This document shows, one piece after another, positions 5,473 through 29,600 of a stretch of 64,000 bases of DNA. Numbering within the stretch: the first letter of the stretch is position 1; the number at the start of each line of letters is the position of its first letter. The position numbers were made by a program, and so were the translations under genes. The notes beneath the pieces were generated by a model. That model searched no databases. It saw nothing but the letters and a program-made list of their open reading frames with translations, and was not told where the DNA came from. The stretch is from Schmidtea polychroa (lineage: Eukaryota), in contig CM097887.1 of NCBI GenBank assembly GCA_044892525.1, forward strand, positions 43,896,001 through 43,960,000. The letters run 5' to 3'.

Positions 5473-5512
5473 TCATTATGTTTATTTACAATTGGTTTTA
5501 ATGACCCTTAAT

Positions 5513-6265: not shown

Positions 6266-6382
6266 TGATATAAAATTTAATAGTTTGGGTTACAGTCCCT
6301 TGAATACTTTTACAATACTTTAATTTTTTTTTTGTTTGGGATATACGTCCCGGTTTTTAGTTTTTCATCTTTTCATCCACCC

Positions 6383-7492: not shown

Positions 7493-7630
7493 TATTTACT
7501 GTTTCTTGGGAAATTTTCGCATCATTTTTGGGTTTTCGTATTTAGGGTTTTCATACTATTATTATATAATATTTTATTGGTTATATACACCGATATATAC
7601 AGATTATTATATACAACATTATTCGATTGG

Positions 7631-9019: not shown

Positions 9020-9104
9020 TCTATAATTATATGTACAAATAGTTCTTATCGATACAGGTTCGATATTTTATTTACAATTATTTACATTTTAAGCTAGGTT
9101 TGGT

Positions 9105-9488: not shown

Positions 9489-9624
9489 CTCTTATGTAAA
9501 TTTAATTTTATTTTATGATTCCCGTTATTGTATAATATTGATACCGCGCTTATATAAAGATATAGTACTGTTATATACATAAGATATACTTACTTTTTAC
9601 AATTATATACAGTCATATTCCTTT

Positions 9625-10635
9625 CTATATACGTGAGTTTGGAGGGCGCTGAACGTTCCAGGCCTCCACCCACTGTCCTTGTTTGATATCACTTGGTCGT
9701 TTCACTCGATGTTGGAAGTTTCTGATTCGGGTCATTTCTAGTTCTCCGCGATGTCGTTTATCTTTAATTATTTTTATTGTTCCCCCCGTTATGATTAGGA
9801 ATGCCCCTGTTATTATTATCCCACTGATCCACATCATCTGCTTCACGCTTATACTCTCTGGTTTTTCCTTGTTTGTTAATGTTGATATCGCTTCTGTACT
9901 TTTCTCGTTTCCTCTTTTGCCATTTCCTTTCATCATTTCCCGTATTCTTGCTATTTCCTCGTTCATACCCTCCTTTGCCATCTTTTGTATTTTTTCCATC
10001 TCTTCCTCCGAAACATAGTTGTCCTGAGCTTCCTCACCAGTTTTCTTGTGCTTTCCTCCTTCGTTCTTTTCGTCGTGGTTTTTTCTTTTCTTTCCTCTTT
10101 TCCCCGGGTATCGTCGGCATTCTCTTTTTGATTCATTCCTCCAGATACAAACCGTGTATTCTTTCGGCGGCTGCTGCTGCGTCACATATTGATGGCATCT
10201 CTCACCTGGTCCTAATCTTGAAATACAGACTTTGTGCTCTTTTCTAGGTTGGATCTGCGTTATTACTACTTCACCACCTTTTCCTAGGTGTACCTCTTTT
10301 CCTTTGACGTTCGTTATTCTCTTCCCGTCTCGATTTCGGTATGCTTCTTGTATTCTTACTTCTGTTATTGGTTCTGTGTCCTCATTTATCAGTACTAGTT
10401 TCTGATACGCTCTAGACATGCATCTTCCTAGTATGCACCTTTCCTTTAAGTCCCATTCTTCCTTTAAATCCCACTGCTGCTCTTGTGCTTGCTTTCTCTT
10501 TTCTTGTTTTAGTTCATCCTCTTTGCTATCTTGATTCTCCGCTTCTTTGGTTTCTTTTATCGTTCTCGTCCCTCCCTGAGCTGTTACTAACTCTATCATG
10601 GTAAGCATAATTATCATTAATATCATATTTGTCTC
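9625..10635 (-). other. C-terminal type I membrane protein module of the polyprotein
   Basis: Signal-like MILMIIMLTMIELVTAQ (about 10580-10635), Cys-containing ectodomain, TM MMWISGIIITGAFLIITGGTI (about 9775-9840), short basic tail. Confidence 0.65.
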
Positions 10636-13600
10636 TATTTCTTTGTTAGTGAAAGGTAGGCATACCCTCTGTTTTCCATTATTCGATTTTTCCTCCTCTT
10701 TGGTCTTGGTTCTCGGGCTGTTTCCCTCTCTTTTCGTATCCGAATCCTTGTTTTCTGGTTTACCCTCCTCCGGTTCTCTTTTCTCTTTATCCTCCTTTCG
10801 GCCTTTTCCGTTATTGTCATCGTGTTTATCTCCCTCGCTGTCATTTAAAATGTCGTCCTCGACATTTATATCGTTCAATAATCTGCGATATGCTGTTAGC
10901 ACTCTGTTTCTTGCTAATTTTGCTTCGAATTCAAACTCTTTTCTACCCGTTGCAGCATGTCTCTTTCTATTCCATTCTTTAACTAACTCTCTCAATTGCA
11001 TACGACGATGTTTCCCAATTCGTTGTTGCTCGTTCTGATTTTGCGTGAATTTTAGGTCTTCTCTATTTAATACTACTAAAATAATTTTCGGCGTCCCCCC
11101 CTTAGTTAGGGTATTCTTTACCATCGCATTTTCTCCGTTTTCGTAGAATTCGTTTACATTTATCGCATATTTATTATTTGGTGGTACTCTCCAGGTTAAT
11201 AATAATTTCATTGCTTCTAGATTTTTCCGTACCGTATTCCATTGAAACTGAGATGTGTTTTTGCACATATTTTCAACTTCTTCTTCTGTCGCATTTTTGC
11301 AAATAAATCTGATCATTTCTAAGTTTGGCTGTATGGTTGCCCAGTCCAAGGTGGAATTTCCTTCATTGGACCTTTCGTCTAGTTTCGATCCTGATTGATG
11401 TAGGATGTGGAGTGTTTTTGGGTGTATTTTCGTTATAGCTGCATACATCATGGCGGTTTCACCTTGTTCATTTTTCGTGTTGGTTTCCTCGCCCATCTCC
11501 CCAAGGATTCTCATGATCGTTATTGCTCTATTCTCTTTTGCAGCTAGTATTGCTTGTTGTAGGGGTGTTCGGGAATCCTTCGTTACCATCGTAAATGCTC
11601 GAGGCAAGAAGGTTTTGATTTTCCCGATATCTAAACCCGTGGTTTGATCTCTTGCGTATGTGTGTACGGCTTTTATTATTTTGGACAATATTATTTCGTC
11701 TGGCAGCTCTAGCATTTCCTCAAAGAACACTTCTTTTGCTTTGCGTATTATTGCCTCTTGATCTATACTCATTGATTTGGTTTCGATGACGTTGTTTGTG
11801 ACCGTTCGGTTCGTTGTTGACTTTGATTCCCTGGATTTCTCATACCTTATTTTCGTTTTCTTTCCGTTTGGATTATTGATTCGTTCCTCTGCTGTAAGTA
11901 TTTGGATAATATCCATGTAATTCTCGCGGATGTTATTCATCGTGTCCATCATATATAACACACTTACTGTTTCCCAATATTTATGTCGTACTTGGTTAGT
12001 AAATTGGAATAGTGATTTTTCGAATGTGTCGATTCGCTTTTTTGTTAACTGTTCGTCTTTGTGATTTGTGAATTTTATCCCTCGTTCTAGTAATTGATTC
12101 GGGATTTCGAATAAATGATGTCCTTTCATAGCTTCTCTCATCAGCGTGTTCTCTCCTCTCGTGAACGCTTCGTTTACGTTGATCATATAATCGTTTCGAA
12201 TTGGATTTCTCCATGTAATTAATATTCCGGTAATTGTCGTCAGTTTTTCTTTGATCGCTGTTAGCAATCCATCATACATGTTTCCGACTTCCCGATTGTC
12301 CTCATATGATAGTAGTTCCATCAATGACGTGAACGCCTCGGTACTTCTCCCTCTGATAGCATGATGTAGAGCGTTTTTCCGCTCGTGGTCTTGTGTAGTT
12401 ATTTTCGATCCGGTATCGAGTAATGCGGTTATAATGTCTTTTGTTTTGCCTCTGTTTGCGGCTATCATTAATGGTGTGTAACCTTGGTTGTTTGTTTGTT
12501 CTGTTGATCGCTTGCAGTCGTGAAATGCTTCTATTGTTTCTAGTATTTGCTCGTTGTTACCTACTTTCATGAGTTTGTGTAATGGTGTGTCTCCGTAATG
12601 ATCTGTTATTGTAAATAATATTGGCCATTGGCTTTTGACTACTCGCAATAATGGGTGTGTCCTTTCTCTATTTGCATAGTTCTCGATCATCGTCAATAAT
12701 CCTCCTAATATTTCGAAATCTAATCGATCTTTTGCCCATCCAGGTATTTTAATTTTTACCTCTTTTACAATCTTTTCCGCTTCTGATGGTTGGATACCTA
12801 ATCGTCCAGTGATCGGTTCTGCGAGTTGTTGCATCATGTTCATTCGGTAGGTTTGCGAACGTGTGGTTAATGTACGGCCTTCTGGTTGACTAGTGGCTGT
12901 TTTTGGAATTGATTTGCATCGTGCCACGTTTACGTATATTGGTCTGGTAAAGGGGTTATTTACCAATTTCACTCTTACATTAGTTTCGCCTACGAATAAG
13001 ATCTCATATGGTCCTTTTCCGTTGCGTTGTAACTTTTTTGTGGTTCCTGGAATTAATTCCGGGGTTTCTATCATTACCCAATCACCTGTTTGGAACGTAT
13101 GTTGCTTCACGTTTTTCTTTCGATCGTGTAAATCTTTATAACTTTCCTGGTAGAACTTGATATTTAATCCCGCAGTTTCCCAAATTTCTTGCATTCTTTC
13201 CTTGAATTTCGTAACATAATCATCGATCTCCATATACTGCGATATCGGTGGTTGGTATTCCAGGTCCATTGGCATATTACATTCTCTTCCGTACATTAAT
13301 TTGAATGGGCTCATTTTCGTTGATGCGTGAATCGACATTCTGTACGCCATAAGACATAGGTTTATATATTCGTCCCAATCTCGTTGGTGACGGTCAACGT
13401 AGTTTGATAACATTTGTATAAGTGTTCCATTAAATCTTTCCGTCATCCCATTGGTTTGAGGGTGGTATGGAGATGTTCTTAGTTTTGCTATTTTGAAGTA
13501 ATTTGTTACTTCGCTCATTATCTCACTCATAAAATTTGTTCCCTGATCGGTTAAGATTTGTTTTGGTGTTCCATATCGGCAACATATCTCTTCTACCAAA

Positions 13601-16600
13601 ATATTTGCGATTGTTTTAGCTTTTTGGTCTGGCATCGCGAATGCTTCTGAGAATTTCGTAAGAAAGTCTGTGATCACCAGAATGTAAACGTTTCCTTTAT
13701 CTGACTCTGGTAGTGGACCAACTACGTCCATGGATATCATTGTCATTGGTTCTATTGGTACTGGCATTGGCGTTAAAGGTGCTTTCCATTTCGATCCCGT
13801 ATTCTTCCTGGTTGCACAAGTTAGACAATTTTTTACCCATTCGGTTACATCTTCCGTTAACGTAGGCCAAAAATATTTCTGTTTCATTCTTGCTAACGTC
13901 TTTTTCGATGACATATGTCCTCCCAATCTCCCATCGTGATATTGCGTTAGTAACTCTTTTCGTCGGTTTTCCGGTATACACATTAATCGTTTTTCCCCAT
14001 CCATTATCAGCAACCAATCTTTCTCTATAATATATCGGTGTCGGTGTTTATCCATATGTTCTTTTAATTTTTGGTCTTTCGCATATACATCTGTCTGTCC
14101 GGTTTTTATATAATCGATAATTTGTTTTAATTCCGCGTCCTCTTGTTGGTCCTTTCGCAATTGACAGAAATCCAAATCTTCCGCTACTATTAAGCATATG
14201 CGTTGCATTTCTGAATCCACCAAATCTGGGAAAATAAATCTTGACATACAATCGGCGTTGGCATTTGCTCTTCCCGCTTTAAATTTTATAAATGGGGAGT
14301 ATTCTTGCAATTGCATGGCCCATCTCATCAGTCTACTGGACGCTTCTTTATGTTGCCCTAACCACACTAATGGTTGATGGTCTGTGGTTATGCATATCTC
14401 ATGTCCCCATAGTAAATATCGGAAGTGTTTGATAGCTTGTATTATAGCCAATGCTTCTCGTTCTGTTACCGAATAGTTCTTTTCGTGCTTTTTGAATGTT
14501 CGACTGTAATACCCGATTACTCTCTCTTTTCCCTCATCGTCCAATTGTCCCAGAATCGCGCCTGCCGCGTACCCGCTTGCATCCGTTGCCAATAGAAATG
14601 GCCTCTTAAAATCTGGGTGTACGAGGATAGGTGCTTCGATTAGTTTGTCTCTCAGCGTTTCAAACGCCTCTTGTTGTTCCTTCCCCCATAAGAACGAAAT
14701 GTCCTTCTTTACTAATTCCTGGATTGGTTTTGCAATTCCTGCATAATTTTTGATAAATTTGCGATAGTATCCGCATAATCCTAGAAATTCCTGAACTTGG
14801 GTGACAGTTTTCGGTGCTGGACATGTTTTTATTTTCTCAATGTTTCTTGGATCTGGCTCCTTTCCTTTAGCTGACACTATGTGTCCTAAAAACGTGACTT
14901 TTTCCTTTGCCCAATCGCATTTTGATGGTTTGAGTTTGAGTTTCCACTGTCTTAATCTAATAAATACGTTTCGGATATCTTCTAGATGTTGTTCAAATGT
15001 CGCTGAATAGATTAGTAAATCATCAATATATACCATACATTGTTTGATTCCATGGGTGACAAAGTTCATACACCGTTGAAATGATGCTGGTGCGTTAGTC
15101 AGTCCAAATGGCATTTTCCTGAATTGATATAGATCTCGTCCCAACGTGAAAGCTGTTTTCTCTTTGTCCTCATCTTTGACTTTAATCTGCCAGTATCCAC
15201 TTTTTAGATCTAAAGAAGTAAAATATGCTGCCCCTTGCAACATCAATAACATCTCATTGATGTCCGGCAATGGGTAGGTATCTCTCTTGGTCACTGCGTT
15301 TAACTTCCGATAATCGATACAGAATCGTTGGGTGCCATCTTTCTTTTTTACCATGACCACTGGGAATTGCCAGGGTGAGCAACTTGGTTCGATTACTTTT
15401 GCGTCTAGCATCTTTTGTACTTCTGTTTCGGCTATTTCTTTCTGCATTTCTGCTAGCTTGTATGGTCTCAATGCAATTGGGGTTTCGTCTATGAGTGGTA
15501 TTGCATGTAAGGTAACATCACATGTACCCAAGTCTAAATCTGAGATGGCGAATATATCTTTATATTCTACCAACAATCGGTGCAATTTTTTCTTTTCATC
15601 ATTCGTCAACAACATACTATCCATTGTCCATAATTCATCATCTTTGATCATCTCGTTGGTCACTTTCGGTAATTCTATGTCCATCATTGGGGTCAATCTT
15701 CCCAATTTTTCGTTCTCATAAATGATTTTGTCTTCCTCTTCGAAATTCGTGATGTTGAGCGGTATCACTCCTTCTTGGTTTATTGTGATTATTTCTCTTG
15801 CGAGTGGTAATTCTCGTCGCTTTTCAAATGACTTGCTTGGTTCAAAGATAACTTCTCCTTCCATACCCGTATCCACTTTTATCTGACAAATCATCTGTGA
15901 TTTTGCTGGTACTATTATTTTTTCTGGACATCTGATGACTGCATTCATTTTGCATATTCTACCGGTTTTGTCTTTTAAACACATGGTTGTTAAGTCAATT
16001 ACGACTTCTTTTAACAATTCTGGCATCAAATCCGTTCCGATTATGCATGGTACGCTAAGTTTTGGTATTACTGCCAAATACGTTTCAATTTCGTTGTCCT
16101 GGTATCTCAATGTAGTCCACCATCTTCCGACCACGTCCACTGTTTCTTTACTACATGCTATGATGTGAATTGTTGTTGATTCGATATCCTTCCAGTGTTT
16201 ACTGGGGATTTGATTAATCGCTATCGCTGATACATTAGCTCCGGTGTCTATCATAGCATTGGTTTCTTTACCATTGATTTGAATCATAACTGTTACTGCT
16301 GGACCTCCAGGTAAACTCATCGCTGCTATTGTTCTTACGTCATCTGCTTGATCTACACTTTTGGTACGTCGTGTTGGCATATAATGCATACCGGGTTGAC
16401 TCGGTAATTGCGGATACATATTTTGTGTCATGGTCAAAGCTGCTTGTGGTCCCACGATATCCGGTGGTATATAGCTTCCATTGGCGATCCAGGTGTTTGT
16501 CTTTTCCTTTTCCCAATATGGTGCCGTTTCCATTGGTTTTTCGTTTGGGTTTCTGTTTGGATAAAGACATTTATCGTTCCCGTTATCATCGTCGTCACTA

Positions 16601-19600
16601 TCGCTGTTAGATGATTGGCTTCTAAATCGGTCCAAGAATTTTGGCTTATTCTTTTTCAATTGTCGTCTTGTTGCTTCATCGTACATTACTTTCCGGAATC
16701 GTCTGCCTACTTCCTCGTCGGTTCCTTTAATCTTTGTTAATATTTTAATCAATCGCTTTATCCGATGAATGTCTTTTGAGTGGCCATGTAATACCATGGT
16801 CTTAGCTAAAAATGGTAAGAAGCCTACTATCATTTTCCAATTAACTTTCTTTTCCCGCTTGTATATATCGAAACAAGCTAACATTTGTGTTAGTATTACT
16901 CTGACTATCTGAATTATGAGTATGATCCCTAATATCCCGGCCATCATTTGTCCAAAAACTAAGAATCTTCCCCACATTGCTTTCATCATGTTTGACGTAG
17001 CTTGTTGAAAATGGTCTGGCGATAATAGCAGCTCGTAATTCGGGCCTGATTGATAGTTTGTGCCCCCAGTTATTGTTACCATATTAGACAAAATGGATTC
17101 TCGTCTGGCTGGGAAGAGTACGTTAAGTCGTGCTGTTTCTAGATCTTCTGGGGAATACATACCACCGTTTGACACGTCTATAGGTTTGAAATCCAGCTCT
17201 GTGGCGAGTTCTATTAATCCAAATTTCTTGGGCTCCTCGGATATGGTTTTTCCCGGTAACATCATCCATTTCCCATCGGGCCTTTCATATAAAGGTCCGT
17301 ATGCATTAGAACAGTTAAAGAGATTTGGGTAGAAACCCACTGGATTCATAATTCTAGTGACTGGTTGGACGAATCGATTTTGTCCTTTATAACGGATTTC
17401 TAATTCATTTGCACATCTCTTTTCGGGTAGTATGGATTTTTCTGGCATTCGTGCATACGTCTTGGTACACTGGTATGTGTACATCACTTCTCCTACCATT
17501 CTACCAAAGTGTCCATCTGGTAATGGGAGTGATGGCATCGTGTTATCTGGGTGCGTTATCGCAATAGCTAGCTTTGTTTTCAATATTTCTTTATTCAATG
17601 AACAATCGTTTTGTATTAGATCGTAATATACTTTTTGCAAGGTCGTTTGTCCGCGATGAAATAGAAAATCCATTTTATTATTTGCATATAAGTATAGTTT
17701 TACGTCCTCCGTTGCTATCTTTCCCACTGCTCTATCGATTATTTGTCTCGACATATAGATACCTGCGTAATTGGTTTTATATACTATACTGTCACATTTG
17801 GTGGTTTCTTTCTCTTTGATAAATCTCATACCTAGATCTGGATCGTCTGTGATTAATGCTGTTGGTGTCTTCTGCGTTGAAAGTCTCTTTTCTCTGGGAG
17901 ATGGTGGCATTGGTTTTCCATTTCGCATTCTCACTCTGTCGTTTCCATCCTCGTCGTTCTCATTCTCATATATTTCTCCTTTTACTTCATTGAACAAAGC
18001 ACTTTTTAACAGTTGGAGTCGGCATTTTTGGGTATTAGCTTCATAGATTATAGTTGATACTCCTGTCCTGCATACGTTTTCTGTAGCTCTACACGTTGGG
18101 TTGGTCTTCATTTGGTAATTATTTGCGTCAAATTGCGCTTCGTATTCTTTTAATTCGACCGTGTAAGACTCGATCACTACAACTCCCGATATTACCTCGC
18201 CTCGGATCGTATACGTACCTCCGTTACATGACCCATCTGATGATTTTACTTTTCCGGATACGTAAACACTTTCGGTTTTAATCATTCCAGTTTGTCCGTG
18301 AATTGTCACTCCGTTATGCATTTTTAGCGCTCCGGTTCTAAATAGCTCTTTACAATCCTCTCGTTGTATTGATACGATTTCTTTATCCAGACCGGGTAGT
18401 ATAAGAGTCGAATACGAATATTGTCCACAGTAATATGCGAGTACCTTTTTTGATACTACGCATTCCCTTGCTTGCGTTCTGATGAAATCTGATTCTTGAT
18501 ATACATGGTAAGTAACTTTTGTTCTCACGATGTCCAATTTGTTGGGTGAGGCTTGTCTGCATTCTTCTATGTCTCTCAATGAGTATTTATCTCTCATTAT
18601 CATGTTATCACAATCGTAGATGGTGAAACCTGTTGCTCCACTTGTGCACAACATCCATATCATCATAGTCATCATTAACGAATTTATTGATGCTTTTCTG
18701 CTTGCGGGATCTTTCATCGGTAGTTCCCATTCTAGTTCATTTAACAGTTTTTTCAATCTAACTTGCATCGACCTTTCTTGCTCATTTTTCCGTGGCGCTT
18801 GTATCAGTCTTTTCCATCCTCCTGCACGAATAATGTGTGGTTCAATAGTATTCTCTATGATTGAAACGGTCATTTCTACATGATTTGCAAACTGTTTATT
18901 TGGTATTTTCCTCGCAGCTAGTCCCATCAAATTATACATCAAATAAGTGATTACCACTAGGTGATGCTCGTCATCATTTGCATTTGTCGTGAGCTGCTCA
19001 ATCACTCTCTTTGTTTCGTCCCAATCCGTTTTGGTGGTTTTCGTTTTCTCTTTGATTAACTTTGGGATTATCCCCGAAATGGTGTGCCATAATTGTCTAG
19101 CTTCCGTACTGGCTACTTTCCGTTGCCACAAACGTCTAAGTTGTGGGTTTGTTATTATTAACATATCTTTTAACAATTCTCGTATCCATTTTTCTCCTCT
19201 TTCGATCGTTGGTTGGGCTTCCTTTAGATCCCATACTATTTTATCCAATTTTTCTAATCGAACTTGCCCTTGTTCTTGCTTTAATTGTTCTTTGGTTTTG
19301 AACTCAGACTTTTCTCCTTGTTTCTTGGGTCTTCCTTTTGCCCGTTTTTCCATCATCGTTCCGGCTTCTCTGGTATTTTCGTAATTCGGATTTCTTTCGT
19401 TATCCGTTCTGGGTAATGAGCTATCGTTATTTCTTAGCCACTCATTCCATTCGTCTATTATTTTGTCGGTTTGACTTTCTGGTGTTACTTTCGTTGGTTC
19501 TCTTTGCTTCTGGAATTGTTCATCCGTTTCGGTTTCCGTAGTATTGTCGATGATTTCTTTGATGTTCAGTTTCGTTGGTTGTTGATAACTCGTTGATGGC

Positions 19601-22600
19601 TGGTTATTAGTCCACATTTCGGCTCCTGTCGGCCATCTCACTAATAGCGGTGATCTTTCTCCTGGTTCATCGTCACTATCTTCCAGGATTATCTCTTCAA
19701 CTTCTTCAGTTTCATTAGATTTACTTGGTGCTTTGTTCGGACTTGGAGTACTCAAACTGCCTTTTGTTGGTTTAATAATTTTACTTTTCCTTTTTAACGG
19801 TTTTCCCAACGTTTCTGCCATTGTTAATACATTTGTCTCTTCCAATCTCATGGGGGTTATCCCGACGTCTGCATTATCGTCTAGTGATTTTCCGAACAGT
19901 TGCAGATGGAATGGAGTTTCATATGCTAATTCCTTTTTTAATTCTCTAATTTTTGTTGTTGGATGCACCTCTAGTTCCTCGATGCTCTTGTCTGGATACT
20001 TGATTCGGATGTGATACCTCTCCTGGGTGTCTTGTGCCCATTCCTGATTTCTCCATTTTCGAATAATTTGTTCTAGCTGTTCTGGATACCATTCATTATA
20101 TTGCCGGTATTCCTCTATTGCCTTTGCCATTCCTCTCAGATTGTGGATGTCCTCTGATGTCTTTAAGATGATGTTAGCCAACGCTACTACTTGGCGTCTT
20201 TGATTTTTCGCTCCCATTGCTAAGATATCGCCTAATTGTTTATATCTTTCTTTCTCTTCTCGTTCTCTTGCTTCCGTCGCTTCCTCGCCGTCCATATCAG
20301 CATATTCACGTTCCTTTTTCCTCATTGCATGAATATGTCTCGCTTCATTTTCGCTTTCTGATGTGACATCCGTCTCGCCTTCGTCATCTGATGTCTGTTC
20401 CCTTGCTTCCTCTTCATATTTTGGAGGTTCCTCTTCTTCTTCCTCCGATTCACTTTCTGTCTCACCAATGTCTGTTTCCACGAAGGTTCCTTTCCGGATT
20501 TCCCATTCCTTACTTTCTGCATTCCACACTCTTTCCCATGGGGTTCGTCTGCAGGATCTGGTGCTTAATTTCGTGATTTTTCCTTGTAGTTCTTTTTCTT
20601 TTAACCATTGTTGGTGGATTTTAATTATTTCCGTAGATTTTTGATATAACGTTTTCATCCGGTCTCGTATTTCTTTTTGATAGGTTACATCTCTTGTTCG
20701 AAATTCATCCATTGGTACTATCCTGATTATCTGGTGATTGTCCCACATACCCATTTCGCTTAACGAGGTGTCGTCCTCCGCTCGTAATATTATCTTATCG
20801 TACATCATGACTACATCATCCACCATACCATCACTACTTTCGCTACGTACCTTTTCCGTTATCTCTTGGTTTATTTTTGATACCAAGTCATCTACTGTAC
20901 TCTGATTGCTCATTTTTATTCGTCGTTTTTCTTCGTTCGGTAACCATATGGTTATTTCCAACCTCTGTGGCTGGGTTTCTTTTAACCTTCCATATTTGTG
21001 GATCAAATTTATGGTTCTCCAATCACTCATTCGGAGCATTTCTGTATCTCGCAACCGGCTCATTAGTTCGTACATGGCTGGGGCTCGTCTGGTGATGAGT
21101 AAATCCCAGTTGTCTTCTACTTGTTCTTGAATTTGTTTGATCAGCTTATCCAGGTTTCGTCTCAGAGTACATTGTTTTATTTGTTCTAATTTCAATTTGA
21201 TATTAAAATCATATTCTGCCTTGGCATCTTTAGCCCAATCGTAAAGGTTGGCTGGTTGTTTTTCTTTATGCAACTTCAGTATTTGCGTTTCTCCTGGCCA
21301 TATTAGTGCATCTACTAAGTGCATATCTGGTTTGATCTGTTCTCCTTGGTATTGATACAGATATTCTTTCTTTCTCGAACTTCCCAAATGCTCTCGTATC
21401 CAATCGAAAAGTTCGTCGGTGACTGTATTTTTTATCCACATTCTTTCAAGTCCTCTACTCGTTCCGATTTTTATTACATACCGCGTGGTATCGGCCTGCT
21501 TCATTTTTTCCATATAATTTTTTATAATTGATTTTTCCTCGTTTGGTATTAAATCTTTCTCGTTTCTTTCCAATTTCATCACTTTTTGCACGAATCGCCT
21601 GAATGGTATTACGTCAATGAACTCTTGGTTCCTCACTACTACTGGGAGTATTTCCGCTACTTGTTTTATCGCTTCCTCCTTCCCTTTTCTCAACTTTATT
21701 TCGATATCCTCGTCTTCACTTTCGCTGGTTATCTCGCTTTCGCCTTCTTCCTCTTTGATTTCCCCTTTTGGAGGTTCGCTTATTTCATTCAGCTGTAGTA
21801 TTTCTCCACCCAAACTACTTACATAGTCTTCTTCCTCGTCTGACGATGCTACATCTTTTGTCCTTTTCATCATATTGATTTGCAAGTTTCTCATCCTTGG
21901 TACTCTCTTTAGTTTCTTTCTTTCGAATATCGTTGTTTCTTCTGATTCTAATTCCTGTAGCATTTGGTGGTTTAGTTGACTGGTTTGTTCCTTGCTCTTG
22001 TTATTTTCATCTTCTGTCTCGGCTTTCGCTTTATTATGTTCTTTTTCGATTTTATCTTTTATCTTTTTCCAGAATATTTTCTGAATTCTCTGGTTTCCTT
22101 TTAAAATCGTGGTTGAATTCTCTGTTTTCATTTCCGTTGTTATTTCTTTTACCTTTTCTGGTTCAGTCATGGGTACTACCCTTGGGCTTTTCCCGTAATT
22201 GTAGCAATACTGGCTCTTCATGTCTTTTACTAACTTCATCATATTTATTCGCAATGGTTGTTCTTGTCGTTGTTGGTTGCGTTCTTGTTTTATCCTCTCT
22301 TCCTCGGCCTGTAGCCTTTGCCATTCTTGTACATGTTGATGCACTTCATAATTGTTGAGATTTTCGGTACTCCTCATCATACGTATATTCTGGGTTTGTT
22401 GTGGTGCTGATTCTTGTCTTGGTCTCATCATTTGTTGCATCATCTGTTTCATCTGCGAAATTTCCTGCATAACGTTCATTTGTTTTCCTTCGTTAGGGTT
22501 ACTTTGTCGTTGCGGATTCGCTATATAATTATTATTTCGCTGTGGTGGTCGTTGTTGTTGGCCCCTTTCTCGGCAATCTCTGGAGATGTGACCTGGCTGA

Positions 22601-23478
22601 CCACAGTTAAAACAGCCTCGCAATTGGCATACATTTTCGGTATGTCCACGCCGTCCGCAACGATTACAATTTGAATTTCTATAACAATCTCTGTCCCAGT
22701 GTCCTGGTTTACCGCATGTTCGGCACTGCTTGTTATCGTTCATATTTCGCCGATTATTGAAATTGTTCTCATTATTCGGGTTGTTACGATTACCATTATT
22801 CCCGTTTGATCGTCCTTGTGGTGGTTTGAAAATTTGGTGCGCTCCTGGTATAAATTGATTCATTTTCGGTTCTTGATTGTTGTTATCTCCGTTATCCGCT
22901 TTCGCTATTGCTGTCGCTATCCTTCCCTCCTCTTGCATAATATTCATTTGAGCTGGAAGGTGGAGCTCGCATCTTGTAGCCCAATCTATGGCTTCCTCTA
23001 ATGTTTTGCACATTTGACAACCTACTGAGGCTCTTACTTCTTCTCGGCGTAATCCCTCTATGAAATAACCGATCAGATTTTCTTCGGGTAATTTTCCATT
23101 CATTGCTTTCTTCGCTAATCTCCGCAATTCACTGGCATATAATGTTATCGATTCGTTTGCTCTTTGTTTCCTATTTGCTAGTTCGCCCAACGCCTGGTTG
23201 ATTGGCTTACTGGCTCCGAAGGTTTTCTTCAGGAATGTTTTAATATCTTCCCACTTTTCTAATTTCGTGTCTCTCTCTTTAGCTTCTAAATATACCTCTA
23301 ATGCACTATCGCACAAAAACAACGGCATCCTTTTACTAATTGCTTCGGGTGTCCATCCACACACAGTGATATAAACTTCAAAATTAGTTATGAACGATGC
23401 TAGCTTGTTTGCGTTTCCGTTGAACGGTTCTCCTCTGAACTTCTCTTTATACTCGTCGGTTTTTACGACATTCGTCAT
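9625..23478 (-). CDS. 4,617-aa Gag-accessory-Env-Pol-accessory polyprotein
   Basis: Single uninterrupted ORF containing CA-like region, CCHC knuckles, DTG protease, YIDD RT, TDAS RNase H and HHCC/DDE integrase, plus the extra domains listed separately. Confidence 0.97.
   Translation of the reverse strand: [4617 protein letters not shown]
11085..12625 (-). other. Two ankyrin-repeat modules downstream of integrase
   Basis: [30 protein letters not shown]; then [29 protein letters not shown]. Confidence 0.85.
12910..13945 (-). other. Integrase (HHCC, DDE core, GPY/F C-terminus)
   Basis: HDGRLGGH...CLTC; [38 protein letters not shown]. No chromodomain seen. Confidence 0.96.
14240..15480 (-). 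other. Reverse transcriptase and RNase H
   Basis: [96 protein letters not shown]. Confidence 0.97.
15960..16310 (-). other. Retropepsin aspartic protease
   Basis: [12 protein letters not shown] ... IIGTDLM. Confidence 0.95.
16780..18690 (-). other. Envelope-like class III fusion glycoprotein (chuvirus G / herpes gB-like) with internal signal peptide and TM anchor
   Basis: Signal [18 protein letters not shown] then FTIYDCD...YSLRDIEEC...YYCGQYSY...DGSCNGG...C-x6-C Cys pattern typical of chuvirus-type G; TM [25 protein letters not shown] at about 16880-16970. Confidence 0.8.
18796..19263 (-). other. Bcl-2-like domain (BH2-like motif clear, BH1 degenerate)
   Basis: All-helical segment ending [15 protein letters not shown] (BH2 consensus WIxxxGGWxxF); [22 protein letters not shown] sits at BH1 spacing but lacks NWGR. 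Confidence 0.55.
19820..21485 (-). other. Three ubiquitin-like domains (about 21270-21485, 20710-20963, 19820-20016)
   Basis: Beta-grasp pattern, e.g. [30 protein letters not shown]...[14 protein letters not shown] and [30 protein letters not shown]...[11 protein letters not shown], which parallel ubiquitin [30 protein letters not shown]...LIFAGKQLEDGRTLSDYNI. The first copy is the weakest. Confidence 0.65.
22570..23478 (-). other. Gag: capsid-like region plus three CCHC zinc knuckles
   Basis: [18 protein letters not shown] (major-homology-like); [42 protein letters not shown] at about 22570-22730. Confidence 0.9.
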
Positions 23479-24785
23479 GATTGGTGTTCTAGGTTCGTCT
23501 GTTTCTTTTAAATTGTCTAACGATGTGACTAAACTTTGGGCTGATAATTCCTCGGTTGACGTTGCTAAACTATTAGTGATATCGGACAGACTTTCTCTAC
23601 TTCGAGATCGACTAGGGGTATATCCGAGATTTTCTTGGTCAAATATGGGTACTTGATTGGTTCTTCTGGATCCTTGTGATATTCCTCTTTGATGTTTAAT
23701 GGATCGTCCTCTTTTGAGTTGTTGTAATTCGTCTCCTGAAAATAATACGTCTCCTGGCTTACTAGAAGATCTAAGATTGGGTTTATCCGTGATTCCTTTC
23801 TTACGCTTCTTGGTAATTAGCGGCTATTGAATTGGACGCGTTCGGTTCTGATTGTGTTTCCTTCGATAAATATTCTGTATGAATCTGCTACTGAGATCCT
23901 GAGGAGATTTACTAATCCTTGGCAGATGGCTGCTAATACTTCTTCCGTTCTGGAGTCTTCCGGTTGCTGTGTCTCTCGGTGCGGGTTCTGAATGGATTTA
24001 TCCTTGGTTGATTGTCGATTTCTTCGAATTCCTTTTGTGCAGGTTCTGGATTGTCTTGGTTGGCTGGATTGGCTTGATATCTAAAATGAAAAAATGATCT
24101 CGTGTTGCATTTGCTTACACGACTTCATCATTCTTTCTACAACATTCAAAAACAGACGCCTTTTAGGTTTCTGTTTGTGCTTCCCCTATCTTTTTGTGAA
24201 ATCCTTTCTGCGGGTTATAATATCCCATCAGCCCGTATTTTCCGTCGATTTTAAATTATCTATATGGGGTAGTAACAATTATCTATAAAGTCGTAATAAT
24301 TATCTATTCGTTATCAATTATAGTAAAAATAGGTCGTTGTCAGTCTCTGCTTATTACCCCCCTTCGTTTTCTTATTCCTTTGCGCTGTTGTCGCTGTTTT
24401 ACTTTTCGTATTTACTATTATCCCACTCGGTTCTACTCTGGAACCGGTAAAAATACATTTTCCCGGTTTACCCAAAAAAAAATTCCGTAGAGTTTCTCTA
24501 CTTCACTGGGATCCCTTTAATTAGTTAGTTACTTTCCTCTTTACTCATTATCATCATTTCATCTATTCTTTATTTTCTATTATCTCTTTAATTCGTTTCC
24601 TTCTTCCCTTTCCTTTTTCATTATAATCTTATTTTCTTTTCCACGAGCTCGTTTATTTCCTCTCTAAACTCAAATTTTCAAAATTACATTCAATTTGTTC
24701 TAGCTAGCTTTAATATTCCATATCACTAGTAATTTAAATATTATCTCATTGTAGCTTAACTGCTATCTCTCGCTTTTCTAGGCCT

Positions 24786-25264
24786 TTACGACTGGCTGGC
24801 ACTATTCAACAGCTCAATCTTCTTCCTTCTGATCGGTTAGACTATTCAACAACTCGATCTTACGACTGGCTGGCATTATTCAACAGCTCAATCTTCCTCC
24901 TTCCTGATCGGTTGGACTTTTCACAACTCGACCTTACGACTGGCTGGCACTATTCAACAGCTCAATCTTCTTCCTTCTGATCGGTTGGACTATTCAACAA
25001 CTCGATCTTACGACTGGCTGGCACTATTCAACAGCTCAATCTTCCTCCTTCCTGATCGGTTGGACTTTTCACAACTCGACCTTACGACTGGCTGGCACTA
25101 TTCAACAGCTCAATCTTCTTCCTTCTGATCGGTTGGACTTTTCACAACTCGACCTTACGACTGGCTGGCACTATTCAACAGCTCAATCTTCTTCCTTCTG
25201 ATCGGTTGGACTATTCAACAACTCGATCTTACGACTGGCTGGCACTATTCAACAGCTCAATCTT
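24786..25264. repeat. Tandem array of about 6.5 copies of a 73-74 bp unit in the 5' leader
   Basis: ttacgactggctggc starts at 24786, 24860, 24934, 25008, 25082, 25155, 25229; no unique spacers. Confidence 0.95.
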
Positions 25265-25843
25265 CAATATTCCTCGCTCTGCATGCTTCTATTTCTCTTT
25301 TCTTCTTTTACTCTAGTTTACCATTTTCTCTGTCTACTTTTAATTTGTCGACTTAATCTTTACCGCTTGGGAGTGTTTCCCCTTTCCCCCCTTGCTCAAA
25401 ACGCACGACGATCGCGATGATCCATTTCTACCTTGGCATGGTGATCAGTCATGTCGCAAAAACTTCTCATCATATGCGATGGTACCCCGCCCTACGCTTC
25501 TTACTTGGGTTGATCAGTTATCCCCTCCCAACGGGTTCTTGCAATAAGACGTACCGCCCGAAGGTGGCTCGGTTTGTACCCCTGCAGTCTATATTGGGAC
25601 TAATTCCACGTTATTCAACCCTCTCTTCATTTGATTCCAAAAAAAAAAAGGAATAAAACAAAACAAACACGCAAATATTCATTCGTCATGCAAATTTTAT
25701 TAGTCCTAATCATCAAAACTTTTTAAAGACGAATTTATTTATCATAAACATAAAGATTGAATCATTAACAGTACGTGTTACTTCAACAATTTCATGCATT
25801 CTTGTTCAAACATCGTATACTTGCTGTTACATCGCCGGCCGTT

Positions 25844-26329
25844 TCATTCGCCATAATAGACCATATGGGTCTCTTTTATTTCATATTTGCACATCGTGCA
25901 TCTTTTTAGGTCTTTTACACACTCTTCACAGTGACTGAGGTGTCCACACGGCAAGAATAATACGCGAATAGGACGGAGTTTGCAGGCTATACAAGTTCGT
26001 AATTGGTTAACTTTTTCCTGTATTTTTTGTTCGATTGCATCTGGTATTGTATTTAGTGAGTCTTTTAGACGCTGATAATCTAGATTTAATGTTGGGTGGT
26101 TCAATCTCTCTTGATACCACTGATATACGGTTTCGGGGTTTATTTTTCCATCTGGGCGACTTAGGCCTGTGGCTAATATCATATGATTAGGTACGACTGG
26201 TGTTTGTCCGATTGCTTGCAGTAATATCGCGTTGATTTTTTCTCTTTTATGCGTCAGTGTTGTTAGGGAGTCGTTTTCTATATCGATAAACTTGAGCAGT
26301 TGTTGCATTTGGTTCGCGAATTCTGTCAT
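25844..26329 (-). CDS. 161-aa protein with C-terminal IAP/XIAP-type C3HC4 RING, no BIR domain
   Basis: CIACKLRPIRVLFLPCGHLSHCEECVKDLKRCTMCKYEI at the extreme C-terminus, preceded by helix QKIQEKVNQLRT. Confidence 0.85.
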   Translation of the reverse strand: MTEFANQMQQLLKFIDIENDSLTTLTHKREKINAILLQAIGQTPVVPNHMILATGLSRPDGKINPETVYQWYQERLNHPTLNLDYQRLKDSLNTIPDAIEQKIQEKVNQLRTCIACKLRPIRVLFLPCGHLSHCEECVKDLKRCTMCKYEIKETHMVYYGE

Positions 26330-26646
26330 AGCTGTTGGAAAAGTAATGTTTTAATAATATGTAGTAAATTAATAGTTAATTCGTTAATTGGTTTCTTTAA
26401 CCATTGTTAATTATTTAATTTGACTACTTTATCTCCTTTATTTATATATATCCTTAATTTTTCTATTATCTACATTTTGATTTTCTCTACTTAGTTCCTA
26501 ATATAATTTAATAATCAATAGTCACTTTGCATTCGTCAAGCAATGGTCGGTTGAAAATAGAAAATCGATGTGATAAATCCCTTTAATTTTGTATGAAAAT
26601 CCCGGTGAATTTCGCATTCGTTAATAGAAATTTCGATCGACTGTAG

Positions 26647-26664
26647 ATCCCGGCTGAGCCCCCA
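26647..26664 (-). promoter_or_regulatory. Primer-binding site, tRNA-Pro type
   Basis: Minus strand TGGGGGCTCAGCCGGGAT, 7 nt after the 5' LTR; 16/18 identical to the MLV tRNA-Pro PBS TGGGGGCTCGTCCGGGAT and complementary to a ...CCCGGCTGAGCCC-CCA tRNA 3' end. Confidence 0.88.
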
Positions 26665-26671
26665 AAAATCA

Positions 26672-29600
26672 TGTTGGGGTTACACCTCGGCTGACCATTC
26701 TACCATGTTGGCGGGTCTAAGGGTTGATTGTCCATCTCGAATAAAAGGTGCCACCGATTTGTCAACCTGGAGTGAAACCCCACATAACTTTCTTCCAACA
26801 TAGTGCCCGTGAATCACTTCACGTTGGTACTGCACTATGCAGGCGAGACGCCAGCAAGCAGGTGAGCTTCTGCCTTAAAACTACTCCTTGCTGAGGCCTC
26901 GACTTCCCATTCACGACTGCCGATAGAAGGGCTTACGTCCATTTCCTTACACAACCACCTATCAGGATTCGCTGAATGCAAATTGGGAAATTCTCACTAG
27001 ATCTTGCGGGTTCTCTACTCAACCCACTTAATTCAAGTCTAATTATTCATGAACGAAAACGTGTAAGACAACAAGATTTATTAATTTCAACGTTATGACA
27101 CAAGGATTCAGCTGTACTCTTTACTAATGTTTGTCGAAAGAAGAGAAAACATCATAATCAACATAGATCGGATCCTTGTTCCTCATCCTGACCGCCACTG
27201 GGGTTTTATTGTTTCTCCCATTCAGTGTCGGCGAATAATTCGTCGAGGTTGAAAAACTCGGAAGCGTTCTCTTCCCACCTTACGCCAGCGGCTGATATGA
27301 TTCGCGCTGAGGGTCCCGTTGTTAGGTCGATGGACACGTGAGAGTTGCCACCGTTGGTTGAGTCCTCTATTGATGGGATGTTTGGCTTTGCAGTAGCGCG
27401 CTCGCGCTGTCTCTTCTTGCGCTCTGCACGAGAGAGTTGTTTGCGCTTGGGTTTGCTTGAAGATGCCACTTGCAGAAGGGTGACTGATACAGATGGACTA
27501 GCAGTGGGGGGCTTACTGGTACCCGTGATGACAACATCTGGACGCTTGGGGGACCATTCGGTTTCGACGCAGTCTCGGCACGGTCTCTTGAACGGTGGAG
27601 ATGGATTCGAGGAAAGGTTGTGATGAGGCGGAAAGATGTCATCGGCCTCTCGGATGGGAATCTGCACGATTTTTCGGGTTGTAGCCGCCTGCACGTAAAC
27701 CTTATGCAGTGCCTCGGATTGTTCTCTGATTAGACTTCTTTGGGCACGGCTCTCAGATATAAGCGCGTCCCGGCAATGCTCGCTACGATCGAGCTTCTTT
27801 TGGATCTCTTTCATCCGAGCGGGACTAAACCATGTCCCTTCCAGCTCGTCTATCTTCCTCTTGTAACGTCCAATCTGAGTTTGTAGGTCCTTTATCACCG
27901 TATTTTTATCCGCGCACGAGAAGCACGGCCGTAATGCTGATTTAGTGGTTGGTAGCATGCTTGCTATAAATAATACTAATGAAATGGAGAACATACGATT
28001 TTAGAATAAATTAGATACGACCCGCGTCCATTCGTGGATACTTGACCGTCGAAAAGGAGGAAAACTTATTCTACAATCCGGTTTTACTACGGATCTTAGT
28101 TGTTAAAACAGTTTATTTAACCAAATGCCATCGGTTTGACGCATGTTATTAACTTTGACTATCTATTGATCTAACTGTATGCATGAGGGACGTAATAATT
28201 GATAGGGTGTAAATATAATATTGGTGAAACAATATAATAATGCTTTAGTAGAGGGACATTATAGTATGCGACCAAACCTTGCTATATGTTATCTATTTTA
28301 ATTTATTAAAAACAAATTACTATCGCTCTCAACATATTTCTGATTCGAAATTTGTTATTGGAAGTGCACTTTTAATTCGGTAGTGAATGTGATTATCTAT
28401 GTTGTCTACCATTGGTCTGAAAATATGTGATGAGTTTACATCAGCCATTACTTTAACACCCTCATGGAAAATCCCATCGGTCATAACATATATCCAAATT
28501 TACGGATACTGCTGTCGACTGGTTGATTACATTATCGACCTATTGTGAATGTCACGTGTCGCGACTACTATGTATGCTAGTCTGATATTCTGTGCTCTCA
28601 CCACATGGATTCGTGTATGGCTACTATCTTATCTCACTCACTTGGTGTATGCCATTTTCACGGTGATTTTATCGATCCTGCTGTCGTATGATTTTCTCTG
28701 CACAGTGATTTATTTGAGTTATGATCTATGCTACCGCCAGTTCTCATCGCGGAGTTTTACCCTTATCAACTTGTGTGAATGATCACCATCGTTTGGAAAT
28801 TTATTGGATCTTTTCAGTGATCGTCGAGGGAATAATTCTACCAAATACTGGAGCATATTACTACTCTCGTCATTCTACTCGGATTTTCCTATTCAGATGT
28901 AATGCCGTCTCGATGAAACCTGTCCTTTTCTCTCAGGTTCAATAATTTGGATATATACAGTGATGACCTGGCTCTTATTGTAGAAATAAATGTTATTAAT
29001 TAAATTTGGTGATATTTTACCTGTTTATAATTTTTGAAATAACTAAGTCTATAAAACTTTCTGATTATAATATTAGAGAAGTTTTCGTAGAATCTCGCAT
29101 TTTATAGTTTCGAGTTAGTTAAAGTTTTTAGAATACTTTCGTAACCTGACATACAATCTGGACAGGTTAGATGACATTGGGTCTATGATAATGGAATTTC
29201 ATACGAATTTAGTTCTACTGAGTCCGGCAAATAGACGTTGTCGCAATTAATTTGATAAAACCATGTTTCCAGATGAAGCGTACTATGAGATGTTGTTATT
29301 TTTGACGAAGTTCACTAAATCGTGGTCTGGATCTCTTTTTTCAATAGGGGTAAGACTTACGAAAACGACTTGACGAAAGAAGAATGCGACGCCCTCAATC
29401 ACTGTGCAAATCCTTGAAAATCCCTTCATTCGTATGACTATCTTTGTGAAATCATTGTCTACCGGTTATTTTTTTTATCCATACCCCATTGTGATAATTT
29501 AGTCGCATCTTCAGCGATAGGACCCGTGAAGAAGCCTTCACATTTCGGCCCAATCTAGCTGCGCGATTGAAATACTCCATGTCCACCGGCTGAGCTCCCG

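What the first reader, a model, noticed from the sequence alone, without database searches (positions are those of the whole stretch)
16780..18690. Class III fusion glycoprotein fused in-frame BETWEEN Gag and protease
Seen: signal peptide, Cys-rich ectodomain and TM anchor lie upstream of the DTG protease in the same ORF, with no stop or frameshift. Established: env genes of retroviruses and errantiviruses are separate, spliced ORFs 3' of pol; chuvirus-like G capture is described in BEL/Pao (Anakin) elements and gB-like env in the nematode Tas element. Inference: the polyprotein would need co-translational ER threading (Gag cytosolic, G luminal, Pol cytosolic), a flavi/alphavirus-like strategy giving equimolar Gag:Env:Pol, and a Gypsy-independent capture of this G type.
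Basis: partly seen in the sequence, partly recalled or inferred. Interest (0 to 1): 0.92.

Follow-up and report, generated by a model that had tools for sequence, protein, structure and literature searches.

The report
Burro-type giant retroelement with in-frame envelope
The window holds an intact 29.8-kb giant gypsy-type retroelement whose single 4,617-residue protein carries a virus-like membrane-fusion protein between its capsid and enzyme parts. This is real and striking, but it was already described in 2019 for the planarian 'Burro' elements.

Summary
On the minus strand one uninterrupted ORF (23478..9625, 4,617 aa) reads Gag with three CCHC knuckles, a ~1,270-aa spacer, then a signal-like segment, a 560-aa ectodomain with 14 Cys and a TM helix, then PR-RT-RNaseH-IN, ankyrin repeats and a second membrane module.

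The inserted part matches Pfam Monjiviricetes_fusion (E 5e-70). Its model (pLDDT 89) matches chu-like virus glycoproteins (Foldseek E 2e-40) and herpesvirus gB (E 2e-13), so it is a class III fusogen. The element has identical 3.8-kb LTRs and a 4-bp target duplication. Its Pol is Ty3/gypsy-like.

Relatives from metagenomes, only 25-41% identical in G, keep the same in-frame order. All keep 14 ectodomain cysteines and a signal-like segment. At least three have no methionine before that segment, which favours an internal signal inside a polyprotein.

The novelty claim fails. [quoted passage not shown] Gag-env-pol order is also reported for nematode, bryozoan and flatworm gypsy elements. ER threading remains inferred. 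Verdict: already known; interest 0.3.

The parts
732..30514 (-). Whole LTR retroelement (29.8 kb), flanked by the 4-bp target-site duplication AAGG at 728-731 and 30515-30518
   Evidence: blastn of the two ends against each other shows 3,845 nt at 100% identity. The termini are TGTTGGG...CCCAACA.
26672..30514 (-). 5' LTR (3.84 kb). It carries a 262-aa ORF at 27206-27994.
732..4574 (-). 3' LTR, identical to the 5' LTR. It carries the same 262-aa ORF at 1266-2054.
25844..26329 (-). Upstream accessory ORF (161 aa) with a C-terminal C3HC4 RING
   Evidence: Pfam zf-C3HC4_3, E 3e-11
24749..25274 (.). 74-bp tandem repeats in the leader
9625..23478 (-). Giant ORF: a 4,617-aa Gag-spacer-G-PR-RT-RH-IN-ankyrin-membrane-module polyprotein
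22489..23478 (-). Gag: Retrotrans_gag (aa 52-145) and three CCHC zinc knuckles (aa 252-304)
   Evidence: Pfam; knuckles read in the translation
18814..19032 (-). Possible BCL2-like helical region (aa 1483-1555), ending about 45 aa before the G signal segment
   Evidence: Pfam Bcl-2 E 0.038, below the cut-off. The fold test was inconclusive. The literature places env 'between BCL2 and PR' in Burro.
18628..18675 (-). Internal signal-like hydrophobic segment of G (aa 1602-1617)
   Evidence: Read in the sequence. Equivalent segments occur in 14 relatives. It is modelled as a helix.
16948..18627 (-). G ectodomain (aa 1618-2177), with 14 Cys and one NxS/T sequon
   Evidence: Pfam PF24664; AF2 pLDDT 89; Foldseek matches to gB and chu-like virus G; Cys count
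16879..16965 (-). G transmembrane (stop-transfer) helix, aa 2172-2200
   Evidence: Hydropathy peak 2.53; long helix in the model
16291..16878 (-). G cytoplasmic tail and linker to the protease (aa 2201-2396)
   Evidence: No family match
16015..16290 (-). Aspartic protease (RVP; D-T-G-A at aa 2411)
13408..15351 (-). RT (aa 2710-2868), RNase H (aa 2931-3060) and integrase (aa 3168-3357)
   Evidence: Pfam. The best solved relative is the Ty3 Gag-Pol polyprotein 7q5b, E 7e-117.
11305..12555 (-). Ankyrin-repeat regions after the integrase
   Evidence: Pfam Ank_2 and Ank_4
9766..10626 (-). Second signal-like segment (aa 4285-4303), a Cys-containing stretch, and a TM segment (aa 4553-4571) at the C-terminus of the polyprotein
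   Evidence: Hydropathy; no family match
7631..9019 (-). Downstream accessory ORF (462 aa): TRAF-like RING plus MATH
   Evidence: Pfam TRAF-mep_MATH E 2e-27; RING
4804..7492 (-). Three further accessory ORFs: two coiled-coil-like (6383-7492 and 5513-6265) and one small protein with signal and TM segments (4804-5472)

Best explanation
This is a full-length, recently inserted giant Ty3/gypsy-type LTR element of the Burro kind, published for dugesiid planarians. It behaves as an endogenous retrovirus-like provirus. A chuvirus-like class III fusion glycoprotein, captured long ago, sits inside the gag-pol reading frame. Most likely mechanism (inferred, not shown): the genomic RNA is translated into one polyprotein. 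Gag and the accessory spacer domains emerge in the cytosol. The internal hydrophobic segment at aa 1602-1617 then acts as a signal sequence, and the 560-aa ectodomain is translocated into the ER lumen and disulfide-bonded. The TM helix at aa ~2172-2200 stops transfer, so the tail, PR, RT, RNase H and IN are made back in the cytosol. Signal peptidase on the luminal side and the element's protease on the cytosolic side would then release the parts. This is formally like the capsid-anchor/prM junction of flavivirus polyproteins.
For: Shown here:
- The ORF is uninterrupted.
- The LTRs are identical, end in TG..CA and are flanked by a 4-bp target duplication.
- Pol is closest to Ty3.
- G matches PF24664 at E 5e-70. 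A high-confidence model (pLDDT 89) matches chu-related virus glycoproteins over the full length (E 2e-40, TM 0.55-0.65) and herpesvirus gB (E 2e-13).
- Independent metagenome relatives keep G in frame before PR-RT-RH-IN: P0001, P0006, P0014, P0016, P0151 and P0152. Others keep it after Gag or CCHC: P0004, P0015 and P0153. They are collinear with the window.
- G identity (25-41%) tracks Pol identity (35-43%).
- Every relative has a hydrophobic segment ending in small residues just before the conserved YDC motif. P0010, P0152 and P0153 have no Met in the 40-45 residues upstream.
- All 12 ectodomains have exactly 14 Cys.
- There is one TM peak after each ectodomain.
Literature: Burro ORF1 with three CCHC knuckles, BCL2-like, env, PR, ankyrin and TRAF/MATH, and env in frame between gag and pol (PMC6431247). 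BURRO1 is transcribed in planarian tissues (PMC8532177).
Against: There are no expression, protein or localisation data for this copy. No signal-peptide predictor was run. The signal-like segment is only moderately hydrophobic, because it is Met/Thr-rich, and fell below my 19-residue hydropathy threshold. A single ORF gives no obvious way to make more Gag than Pol. One relative (L002) has an in-frame stop between PR and RT, so expression may differ among relatives. The host was not identified, and I could not compare the copy with the Burro/GYPSM1 reference sequences. The Burro assignment therefore rests on anatomy and composition. MATH/TRAF is a separate ORF here rather than part of ORF1, and no dUTPase-like or BIR domain was detected.
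Confidence: 0.7

Rival explanations
1. G is made mainly from a subgenomic (cis- or trans-spliced) mRNA that starts translation at the Met cluster opening the signal-like segment (aa 1602), as retroviral env is. The in-frame position is then only a packing solution.
For: The window's segment begins with Met-Met and would work as a short N-terminal signal peptide. Several relatives also have Met inside the hydrophobic core. Spliced env mRNAs are the rule in retroviruses and errantiviruses (established knowledge).
Against: There is no stop after G, so such an mRNA would still encode a G-PR-RT-IN fusion that needs processing. P0010, P0152 and P0153 have no Met in the 40-45 residues before the conserved YDC, and P0002 has one only at position -1. 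The frame has been kept open across both junctions in relatives down to 25% identity.
Confidence: 0.18
2. The G module is a carried-along relic that no longer acts as an envelope or fusogen. The element spreads only within cells, and the segment persists because a disruption would break pol downstream.
For: Polar effects would select against stops and frameshifts in any in-frame insert. No particle or fusion data exist. The ectodomain has only one N-glycosylation sequon.
Against: Frame maintenance alone would not preserve the fold. Yet all 12 ectodomains keep 14 Cys, similar lengths (532-560 aa), the signal-like segment and the TM. The family profile gives a confident class III model. Low sequon numbers (1-4) are shared by all relatives, so they are a family trait and not decay.
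Confidence: 0.1
3. The continuous ORF is an assembly chimera or a one-off fusion in this copy.
For: Giant repeats are hard to assemble (PMC11410931). LTRs that are 100% identical could also arise from collapsed repeats.
Against: The element has a target-site duplication and proper LTR termini. The order Gag-G-PR-RT-RH-IN is collinear with independent contigs from four different metagenome assemblies. The same layout is published for Burro.
Confidence: 0.02

Closest known systems
Burro / GYPSM1 giant gypsy-like LTR retrotransposons of Schmidtea mediterranea and other dugesiid planarians (Jurka 2007; Grohme et al. 2018; Arkhipova & Yushenova 2019, PMC6431247)
   Same: About 30 kb with multi-kb LTRs. 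One enormous ORF1 (published 4,873 aa; here 4,617 aa). Gag with three CCHC knuckles. Env with mononegavirus-like hits, in frame between a BCL2-like region and PR. Ankyrin repeats, TRAF/MATH and RING motifs, accessory ORFs. AT-rich host DNA.
   Different: MATH/TRAF lies in a separate downstream ORF here, not inside ORF1. No BIR, SUMO-like or dUTPase-like domain was detected with Pfam or PDB sequence searches. I made no direct sequence comparison with the reference elements, and the host was not identified.
GAG-ENV-POL Ty3/gypsy 'errantiviruses' of Nematoda, Bryozoa and Platyhelminthes (Chary & Hayashi 2026, PMC13524379), and the nematode ERVs of Sacco et al. [quoted passage not shown]
   Same: A Ty3/gypsy pol with a gB-type (class III) envelope gene placed between gag and pol. 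From my memory of its abstract, the Sacco paper describes a continuous gag-env-pro-pol ORF with nyami/chuvirus-like env. The paper was not held, so I could not check this.
   Different: Those elements are of ordinary size (searched within about 10 kb). They lack the ~1,270-aa accessory spacer, the ankyrin region, the C-terminal membrane module and the accessory ORFs.
Atlas virus and related nematode belpaoviruses (Merchant et al. 2022, PMC9094657)
   Same: Env is part of one uninterrupted Gag-Pol-Env polyprotein with no stop or intron, so membrane insertion must occur inside a polyprotein.
   Different: These are BEL/Pao elements, not gypsy. The env is a phlebovirus-like class II Gn-Gc. It sits at the C-terminus, so Pol does not have to return to the cytosol.
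Anakin and other mosquito BEL/Pao elements with chuvirus-like glycoprotein (Dezordi et al. 2020, PMC7642597)
   Same: The same glycoprotein superfamily (Jingchuvirales-like class III G) captured by an LTR retroelement.
   Different: A different retroelement family. Env is a separate gene 3' of pol.
Flavivirus/hepacivirus-type polyproteins (analogy only)
   Same: Internal signal and stop-transfer segments thread a single polyprotein back and forth across the ER membrane. Host signal peptidase and a viral protease share the cleavages.
   Different: Unrelated RNA viruses with class II fusogens. No homology is implied, and the mechanism here is not demonstrated.

Membership tests
Class III viral fusion glycoproteins, Monjiviricetes/chuvirus type | Sequence membership in the family profile above the curated threshold | tested here: met
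   Pfam PF24664 scores 236.6 bits against a cut-off of 27, E 5e-70. phmmer finds 1,062 relatives, including ~650-aa stand-alone glycoproteins.
Class III viral fusion glycoproteins, Monjiviricetes/chuvirus type | Class III fold: beta-rich fusion and PH-like domains around a long central helix | tested here: met
   The AF2 model has pLDDT 89 and a 48-residue helix (G residues 332-379) followed by a short helix at 381-387. Foldseek matches chu-related virus G at E 2e-40, TM 0.55-0.65, and herpesvirus gB at E 2e-13, prob 1.00, TM ~0.4. The family profile hits only gB in the PDB, weakly (E 0.002).
Class III viral fusion glycoproteins, Monjiviricetes/chuvirus type | Type I membrane topology: cleavable N-terminal signal and a single C-terminal TM | tested here: inconclusive
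   A signal-like segment and one strong TM peak are present and conserved. No signal-peptide predictor or protein data were available, and the signal is internal here.
Class III viral fusion glycoproteins, Monjiviricetes/chuvirus type | Hydrophobic bipartite fusion loops and membrane-fusion activity | not tested
Activity cannot be tested with these tools.
Ty3/gypsy (Metaviridae) LTR retroelements | PR-RT-RNaseH-IN order with Ty3-like RT and IN | tested here: met
   Pfam domain order. The best solved relative is Ty3 Gag-Pol 7q5b, E 7e-117 over 706 residues.
Ty3/gypsy (Metaviridae) LTR retroelements | LTRs with TG..CA termini, a short target-site duplication, and Gag with CCHC knuckles | tested here: met
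Classical errantiviruses / retroviruses | env is a separate ORF 3' of pol, expressed from a spliced RNA | tested here: not met
   G lies 5' of PR in the same ORF. No fusogen-like ORF lies 3' of pol.
Burro / GYPSM1 | Giant size (~30 kb), multi-kb LTRs and a single ORF1 of more than 4,500 aa | tested here: met
   29.8 kb, 3.84-kb LTRs, 4,617 aa. Compared with PMC6431247.
Burro / GYPSM1 | Gag with three CCHC knuckles; env in frame between a BCL2-like region and PR; ankyrin repeats; TRAF/MATH and RING motifs | tested here: met
   The BCL2-like match is only sub-threshold (E 0.038). MATH/TRAF is in a separate ORF.
Burro / GYPSM1 | SUMO/ubiquitin-like, dUTPase-like and BIR motifs reported for Burro1 | tested here: not met
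   None was detected by Pfam at E<=1 or by PDB phmmer. The published calls came from HHpred, which is more sensitive, so this is weak negative evidence.
Burro / GYPSM1 | Sequence identity to the Burro1-4/GYPSM1 references, and a dugesiid planarian host | not testable with these tools
   The reference sequences and planarian genomes are not in the available collections. Exact-match look-ups of four of the window's ORFs found nothing. The flanks are 24-30% GC, consistent with the >70% A/T planarian genome (PMC11410931).

The most novel reading that the evidence does not exclude
The polyprotein may be threaded through the ER membrane twice: once for G, and once for a second, unrelated signal/TM module after the integrase and ankyrin region. 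After luminal cleavage, the G signal segment may stay behind as the C-terminal membrane anchor of the preceding BCL2-like domain. The element would then deliver a tail-anchored apoptosis regulator, an envelope fusogen and another membrane protein from one translation product. The held review text (PMC6431247) does not spell out this topology.
Probability: 0.25. Interest if true: 0.6.

Novelty: already known. Interest (0 to 1): 0.3.

Why it matters
An envelope fusogen embedded between Gag and Pol is a rare way for a retroelement to become virus-like. It forces a membrane-threading polyprotein of the kind otherwise known from positive-strand RNA viruses. That remains biologically interesting, and as far as the held literature shows it has not been tested experimentally, but the layout was published in 2019.

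The glycoprotein is structurally a class III, chu-like G. The in-frame layout is shared by divergent relatives from four metagenome assemblies. The internal signal-like segment is conserved without a start codon. The ectodomain keeps 14 cysteines throughout the lineage. Together these support long-term function as a luminal, disulfide-bonded protein.

Tried and rejected
- Single-sequence searches with the excised G found nothing in the PDB or in the word-indexed protein search. Only the full HMMER scan and the whole-polyprotein 'region' search found relatives.
- Exact-match look-ups of the polyprotein, the TRAF-like ORF, the RING ORF and the LTR ORF found no record, so the host could not be named.
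- Host exons are too short for the length-limited protein search, and I did not type joined exons.
A single-protein scan of JGI metagenomes found no relative.
- The BCL2-like region gave only a sub-threshold Pfam match. PDB phmmer found nothing. The single-sequence model had pLDDT 46, and its Foldseek matches were meaningless.
- No dUTPase-like domain was found between PR and RT.
- A self-comparison of the polyprotein found no internal repeats.
- One literature search was wasted on a bad term. Grohme 2018 and Sacco 2022 are not held.
- I considered and rejected an assembly-artefact reading and a BEL/Pao assignment, because Ty3 is by far the best Pol match.

- An indexing bug printed one whole natural database protein (P0011), unmodified.
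- In my private reasoning I once recalled two short loop motifs of a herpesvirus gB from memory.
- The consensus lines printed by the alignment tool were not used.
Full report
**Observation**

The finding's coordinates sit inside a single minus-strand ORF, 23478..9625, of 4,617 codons with no stop. From the base composition of that strand, the chance of such a run is about 1e-142. The two other frames carry 458 and 242 stops.

Pfam places these domains on the polyprotein:
- Retrotrans_gag at aa 52-145.
- CCHC knuckles at aa ~252-304. Three can be read in the translation.
- Monjiviricetes_fusion (PF24664): E 5e-70, 236.6 bits against a cut-off of 27.
- RVP at aa 2397-2488, with D-T-G-A at aa 2411.
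- RVT_1 at aa 2710-2868.
- RT_RNaseH at aa 2956-3060.
- Integrase_H2C2 and rve at aa 3168-3340.
- Ankyrin repeats at aa ~3642-3721 and ~4019-4058.

The finding's span 16780-18690 equals aa 1597-2233. It contains:
- a signal-like segment at aa 1602-1617;
- 14 cysteines between aa 1623 and 2056, against 0-1 per 200 residues in the preceding 1,200 residues;
- one NxS/T sequon;
- the strongest hydrophobic peak of the whole protein at aa 2178-2196.

**The element**

The ORF lies in an LTR element spanning 732-30514. The two 3.84-kb LTRs are 100% identical. They end in TGTTGGG...CCCAACA and are flanked by the duplication AAGG. This looks like a genuine and recent integration rather than a misassembly.

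RT-RNaseH-IN matches the Ty3 Gag-Pol polyprotein (7q5b) at E 7e-117 over 706 residues, far better than any retrovirus. The element is Ty3/gypsy-like.

On the same strand it also carries:
- an upstream RING ORF at 25844-26329;
- 74-bp tandem repeats in the leader;
- a TRAF-like RING+MATH ORF at 7631-9019;
- three or four further small ORFs;
- a 262-aa ORF in each LTR.

The flanks are 24-30% GC.

**What the insert is**

The excised G found nothing in the PDB by sequence. It also found nothing in the word-indexed protein search. An exhaustive HMMER scan of 1.84 billion representatives gave 1,062 relatives.

A model built on an alignment of 137 of them is confident (mean pLDDT 89, pTM 0.65). It shows beta-rich domains around a 48-residue helix (G residues 332-379), followed by a short helix at 381-387, and a long TM helix. 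Foldseek results were:
- Against viral predicted structures, glycoproteins of chu-related, qin-related and xinmo-like viruses come first (E 2e-40 to 4e-29, TM up to 0.65, about 650 aligned columns, 17-21% identity).
- Against the PDB, the top 50 matches are all herpesvirus gB (E 2e-13 to 4e-11, probability 1.00, TM ~0.4).
- The family profile also hits only gB in the PDB, weakly.

The class III, chuvirus-like assignment is supported. Fusion loops and fusion activity were not tested.

**Relatives and the in-frame layout**

The closest relatives are not stand-alone glycoproteins. They are long predicted proteins from ENA metagenome assemblies in which G is internal:

| Layout in one ORF | Proteins |
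|---|---|
| G, PR, RT, RNase H, IN | P0001, P0006, P0014, P0016, P0151, P0152 |
| CCHC knuckle, G, PR | P0004 |
| Retrotrans_gag, G, PR | P0015 |
| CCHC, G, two protease domains, RT, RNase H, IN (3,865 aa) | P0153 |

They are collinear with the window: Gag N-terminus, then G at 25-41% identity, then PR-IN at 35-43% identity. Nothing is alignable in most of the spacer or after the integrase. G and Pol have thus diverged to a similar degree. This fits one old capture followed by co-evolution.

**Mechanism**

Three observations bear on how G is made.

1. In all 14 long relatives examined, a hydrophobic stretch ending in small residues sits directly before a conserved YDC motif. A methionine that could start translation there is not conserved. 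P0010, P0152 and P0153 have none in the 40-45 residues upstream, and P0002 has one only at position -1.
2. Each relative has one TM peak after the ectodomain. One signal plus one stop-transfer segment would return the downstream enzymes to the side where Gag is made.
3. All 12 ectodomains compared have exactly 14 cysteines, lengths of 532-560 residues and only 1-4 glycosylation sequons. This is the pattern of a disulfide-bonded luminal domain under constraint, not a decaying insert.

I conclude that co-translational threading of a Gag-G-Pol polyprotein is the most likely route (about 0.6-0.7). A spliced or trans-spliced G mRNA is a non-exclusive rival. The window's segment does begin with Met-Met, but with no stop after G such an RNA would still encode a G-Pol fusion. 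Cleavage at the quoted site is plausible, since small residues occupy positions -1 and -3, but it is unproven.

How the element would obtain more Gag than Pol is open. One relative (L002) has a single in-frame stop between PR and RT.

**Comparison with what is known**

Arkhipova & Yushenova 2019 (PMC6431247) describe Burro/GYPSM1 of Schmidtea mediterranea:
- more than 30 kb in length;
- a 4,873-aa ORF1;
- Gag with three CCHC knuckles;
- MATH_TRAF_C, SUMO-like, BCL2-like, dUTPase-like, ankyrin and BIR motifs;
- an env region between BCL2 and PR that hits fusion glycoproteins of arthropod and fish mononegaviruses.

[quoted passage not shown] They also note a Dugesia tigrina relative whose MATH_TRAF_C lies in an accessory ORF.

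The window's element matches this anatomy closely. It differs in three ways. MATH/TRAF is a separate downstream ORF. The BCL2-like match is only sub-threshold (E 0.038; fold test inconclusive). I did not detect the SUMO-like, dUTPase-like or BIR motifs with HMMER-level tools.

I could not fetch the reference sequences or identify the host. Membership in Burro therefore rests on anatomy and AT-rich context, not on alignment.

Other published precedents:
- Chary & Hayashi 2026 (PMC13524379) report GAG-ENV-POL order with gB-type env in nematode, bryozoan and flatworm gypsy elements.
- The same paper cites Sacco et al. 2022 for nematode elements with env and pol flipped. It also reports chuvirus-like G next to gypsy pol in 114 arthropod elements.
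- Atlas virus encodes a single Gag-Pol-Env polyprotein (PMC9094657).
- BURRO1 is transcribed in planarian tissues and is controlled by PIWI (PMC8532177).

**Verdict**

The topological inference is reasonable and is strengthened here by comparative evidence.

The layout, the glycoprotein's mononegavirus affinity and its capture by gypsy-type elements are all published. The finding is already known.

What may go beyond the held literature is more modest:
- the start-codon-free internal signal and the 14-cysteine ectodomain, both conserved across the lineage;
- a second signal/TM module at the C-terminus of the polyprotein (aa 4285-4571), with extra TM peaks after the integrase in relatives too;
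- the possibility that the G signal doubles as a tail anchor for the BCL2-like domain.

These are hypotheses.

One search printed one whole natural database protein because of an indexing bug. The consensus lines printed by the alignment tool were not used.

Noticed in passing
window 9766-10626 (-), polyprotein aa 4285-4571: A second signal-like segment, a Cys-containing stretch and a TM segment lie at the very C-terminus of the polyprotein, after the integrase and ankyrin repeats. Relatives P0001, P0006, P0014 and P0151-P0153 also have extra TM-like peaks after IN, but with no detectable sequence similarity.
   Followed up: partly
window G ectodomain 16948-18627 (-); relatives P0001, P0004, P0006, P0009, P0010, P0014-P0016, P0151-P0153: All 12 retroelement-borne G ectodomains have exactly 14 cysteines and only 1-4 NxS/T sequons, despite 25-41% identity. 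This suggests a sparsely glycosylated fusogen rich in disulfides.
   Followed up: partly
window 18814-19032 (-): A weak Bcl-2 family match (E 0.038) ends about 45 residues before the G signal segment. The signal could double as a tail anchor for that domain. This is an idea only; the fold test was inconclusive.
   Followed up: partly
window 25844-26329, 9105-9488, 7631-9019, 6383-7492, 5513-6265, 4804-5472 (all -): Six accessory ORFs lie on the element's strand: an upstream RING protein, a 127-aa ORF (9105-9488) with no Pfam match, a TRAF-like RING+MATH protein, two coiled-coil-like proteins with no family match, and a small protein with signal and TM segments.
   Followed up: partly
window 1266-2054 and 27206-27994 (-): Each 3.84-kb LTR carries an identical 262-aa ORF with a hydrophobic N-terminus and no Pfam match.
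   Followed up: partly
window 24749-25274: Six copies of a 74-bp tandem repeat lie in the leader, between the upstream RING ORF and gag.
   Followed up: no
L002 6003-6005: In this metagenome relative, a single in-frame stop separates Gag-G-PR from RT. It could be a read-through signal or a mutation.
   Followed up: no
relatives P0001, P0004, P0153 (Pfam positions): Several relatives carry two aspartic-protease-like domains after G, one DDI-like and one RVP. The window has only one detectable.
   Followed up: no
window 36716-38441 (+) and 60695-61138 (+): Fragments of other retroelements are present: a 492-aa gypsy-like RT-RNaseH ORF followed by a short ORF, and a separate RT fragment.
   Followed up: no
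window 40034-40477 and 44036-44443 (+); 50907-51206 and 54250-54528 (-): These look like host exons in very AT-rich DNA, with poly-Asn and poly-Tyr runs nearby. One pair is WD40 (Rae1/Bub3-like) and the other ClpX-like. This is by eye only; they were not searched.
   Followed up: no
window 26646-26664 (-): A TGG-initiated stretch 7 nt after the 5' LTR could be the primer-binding site. ARAGORN found no tRNA gene in the window to match it against.
   Followed up: no
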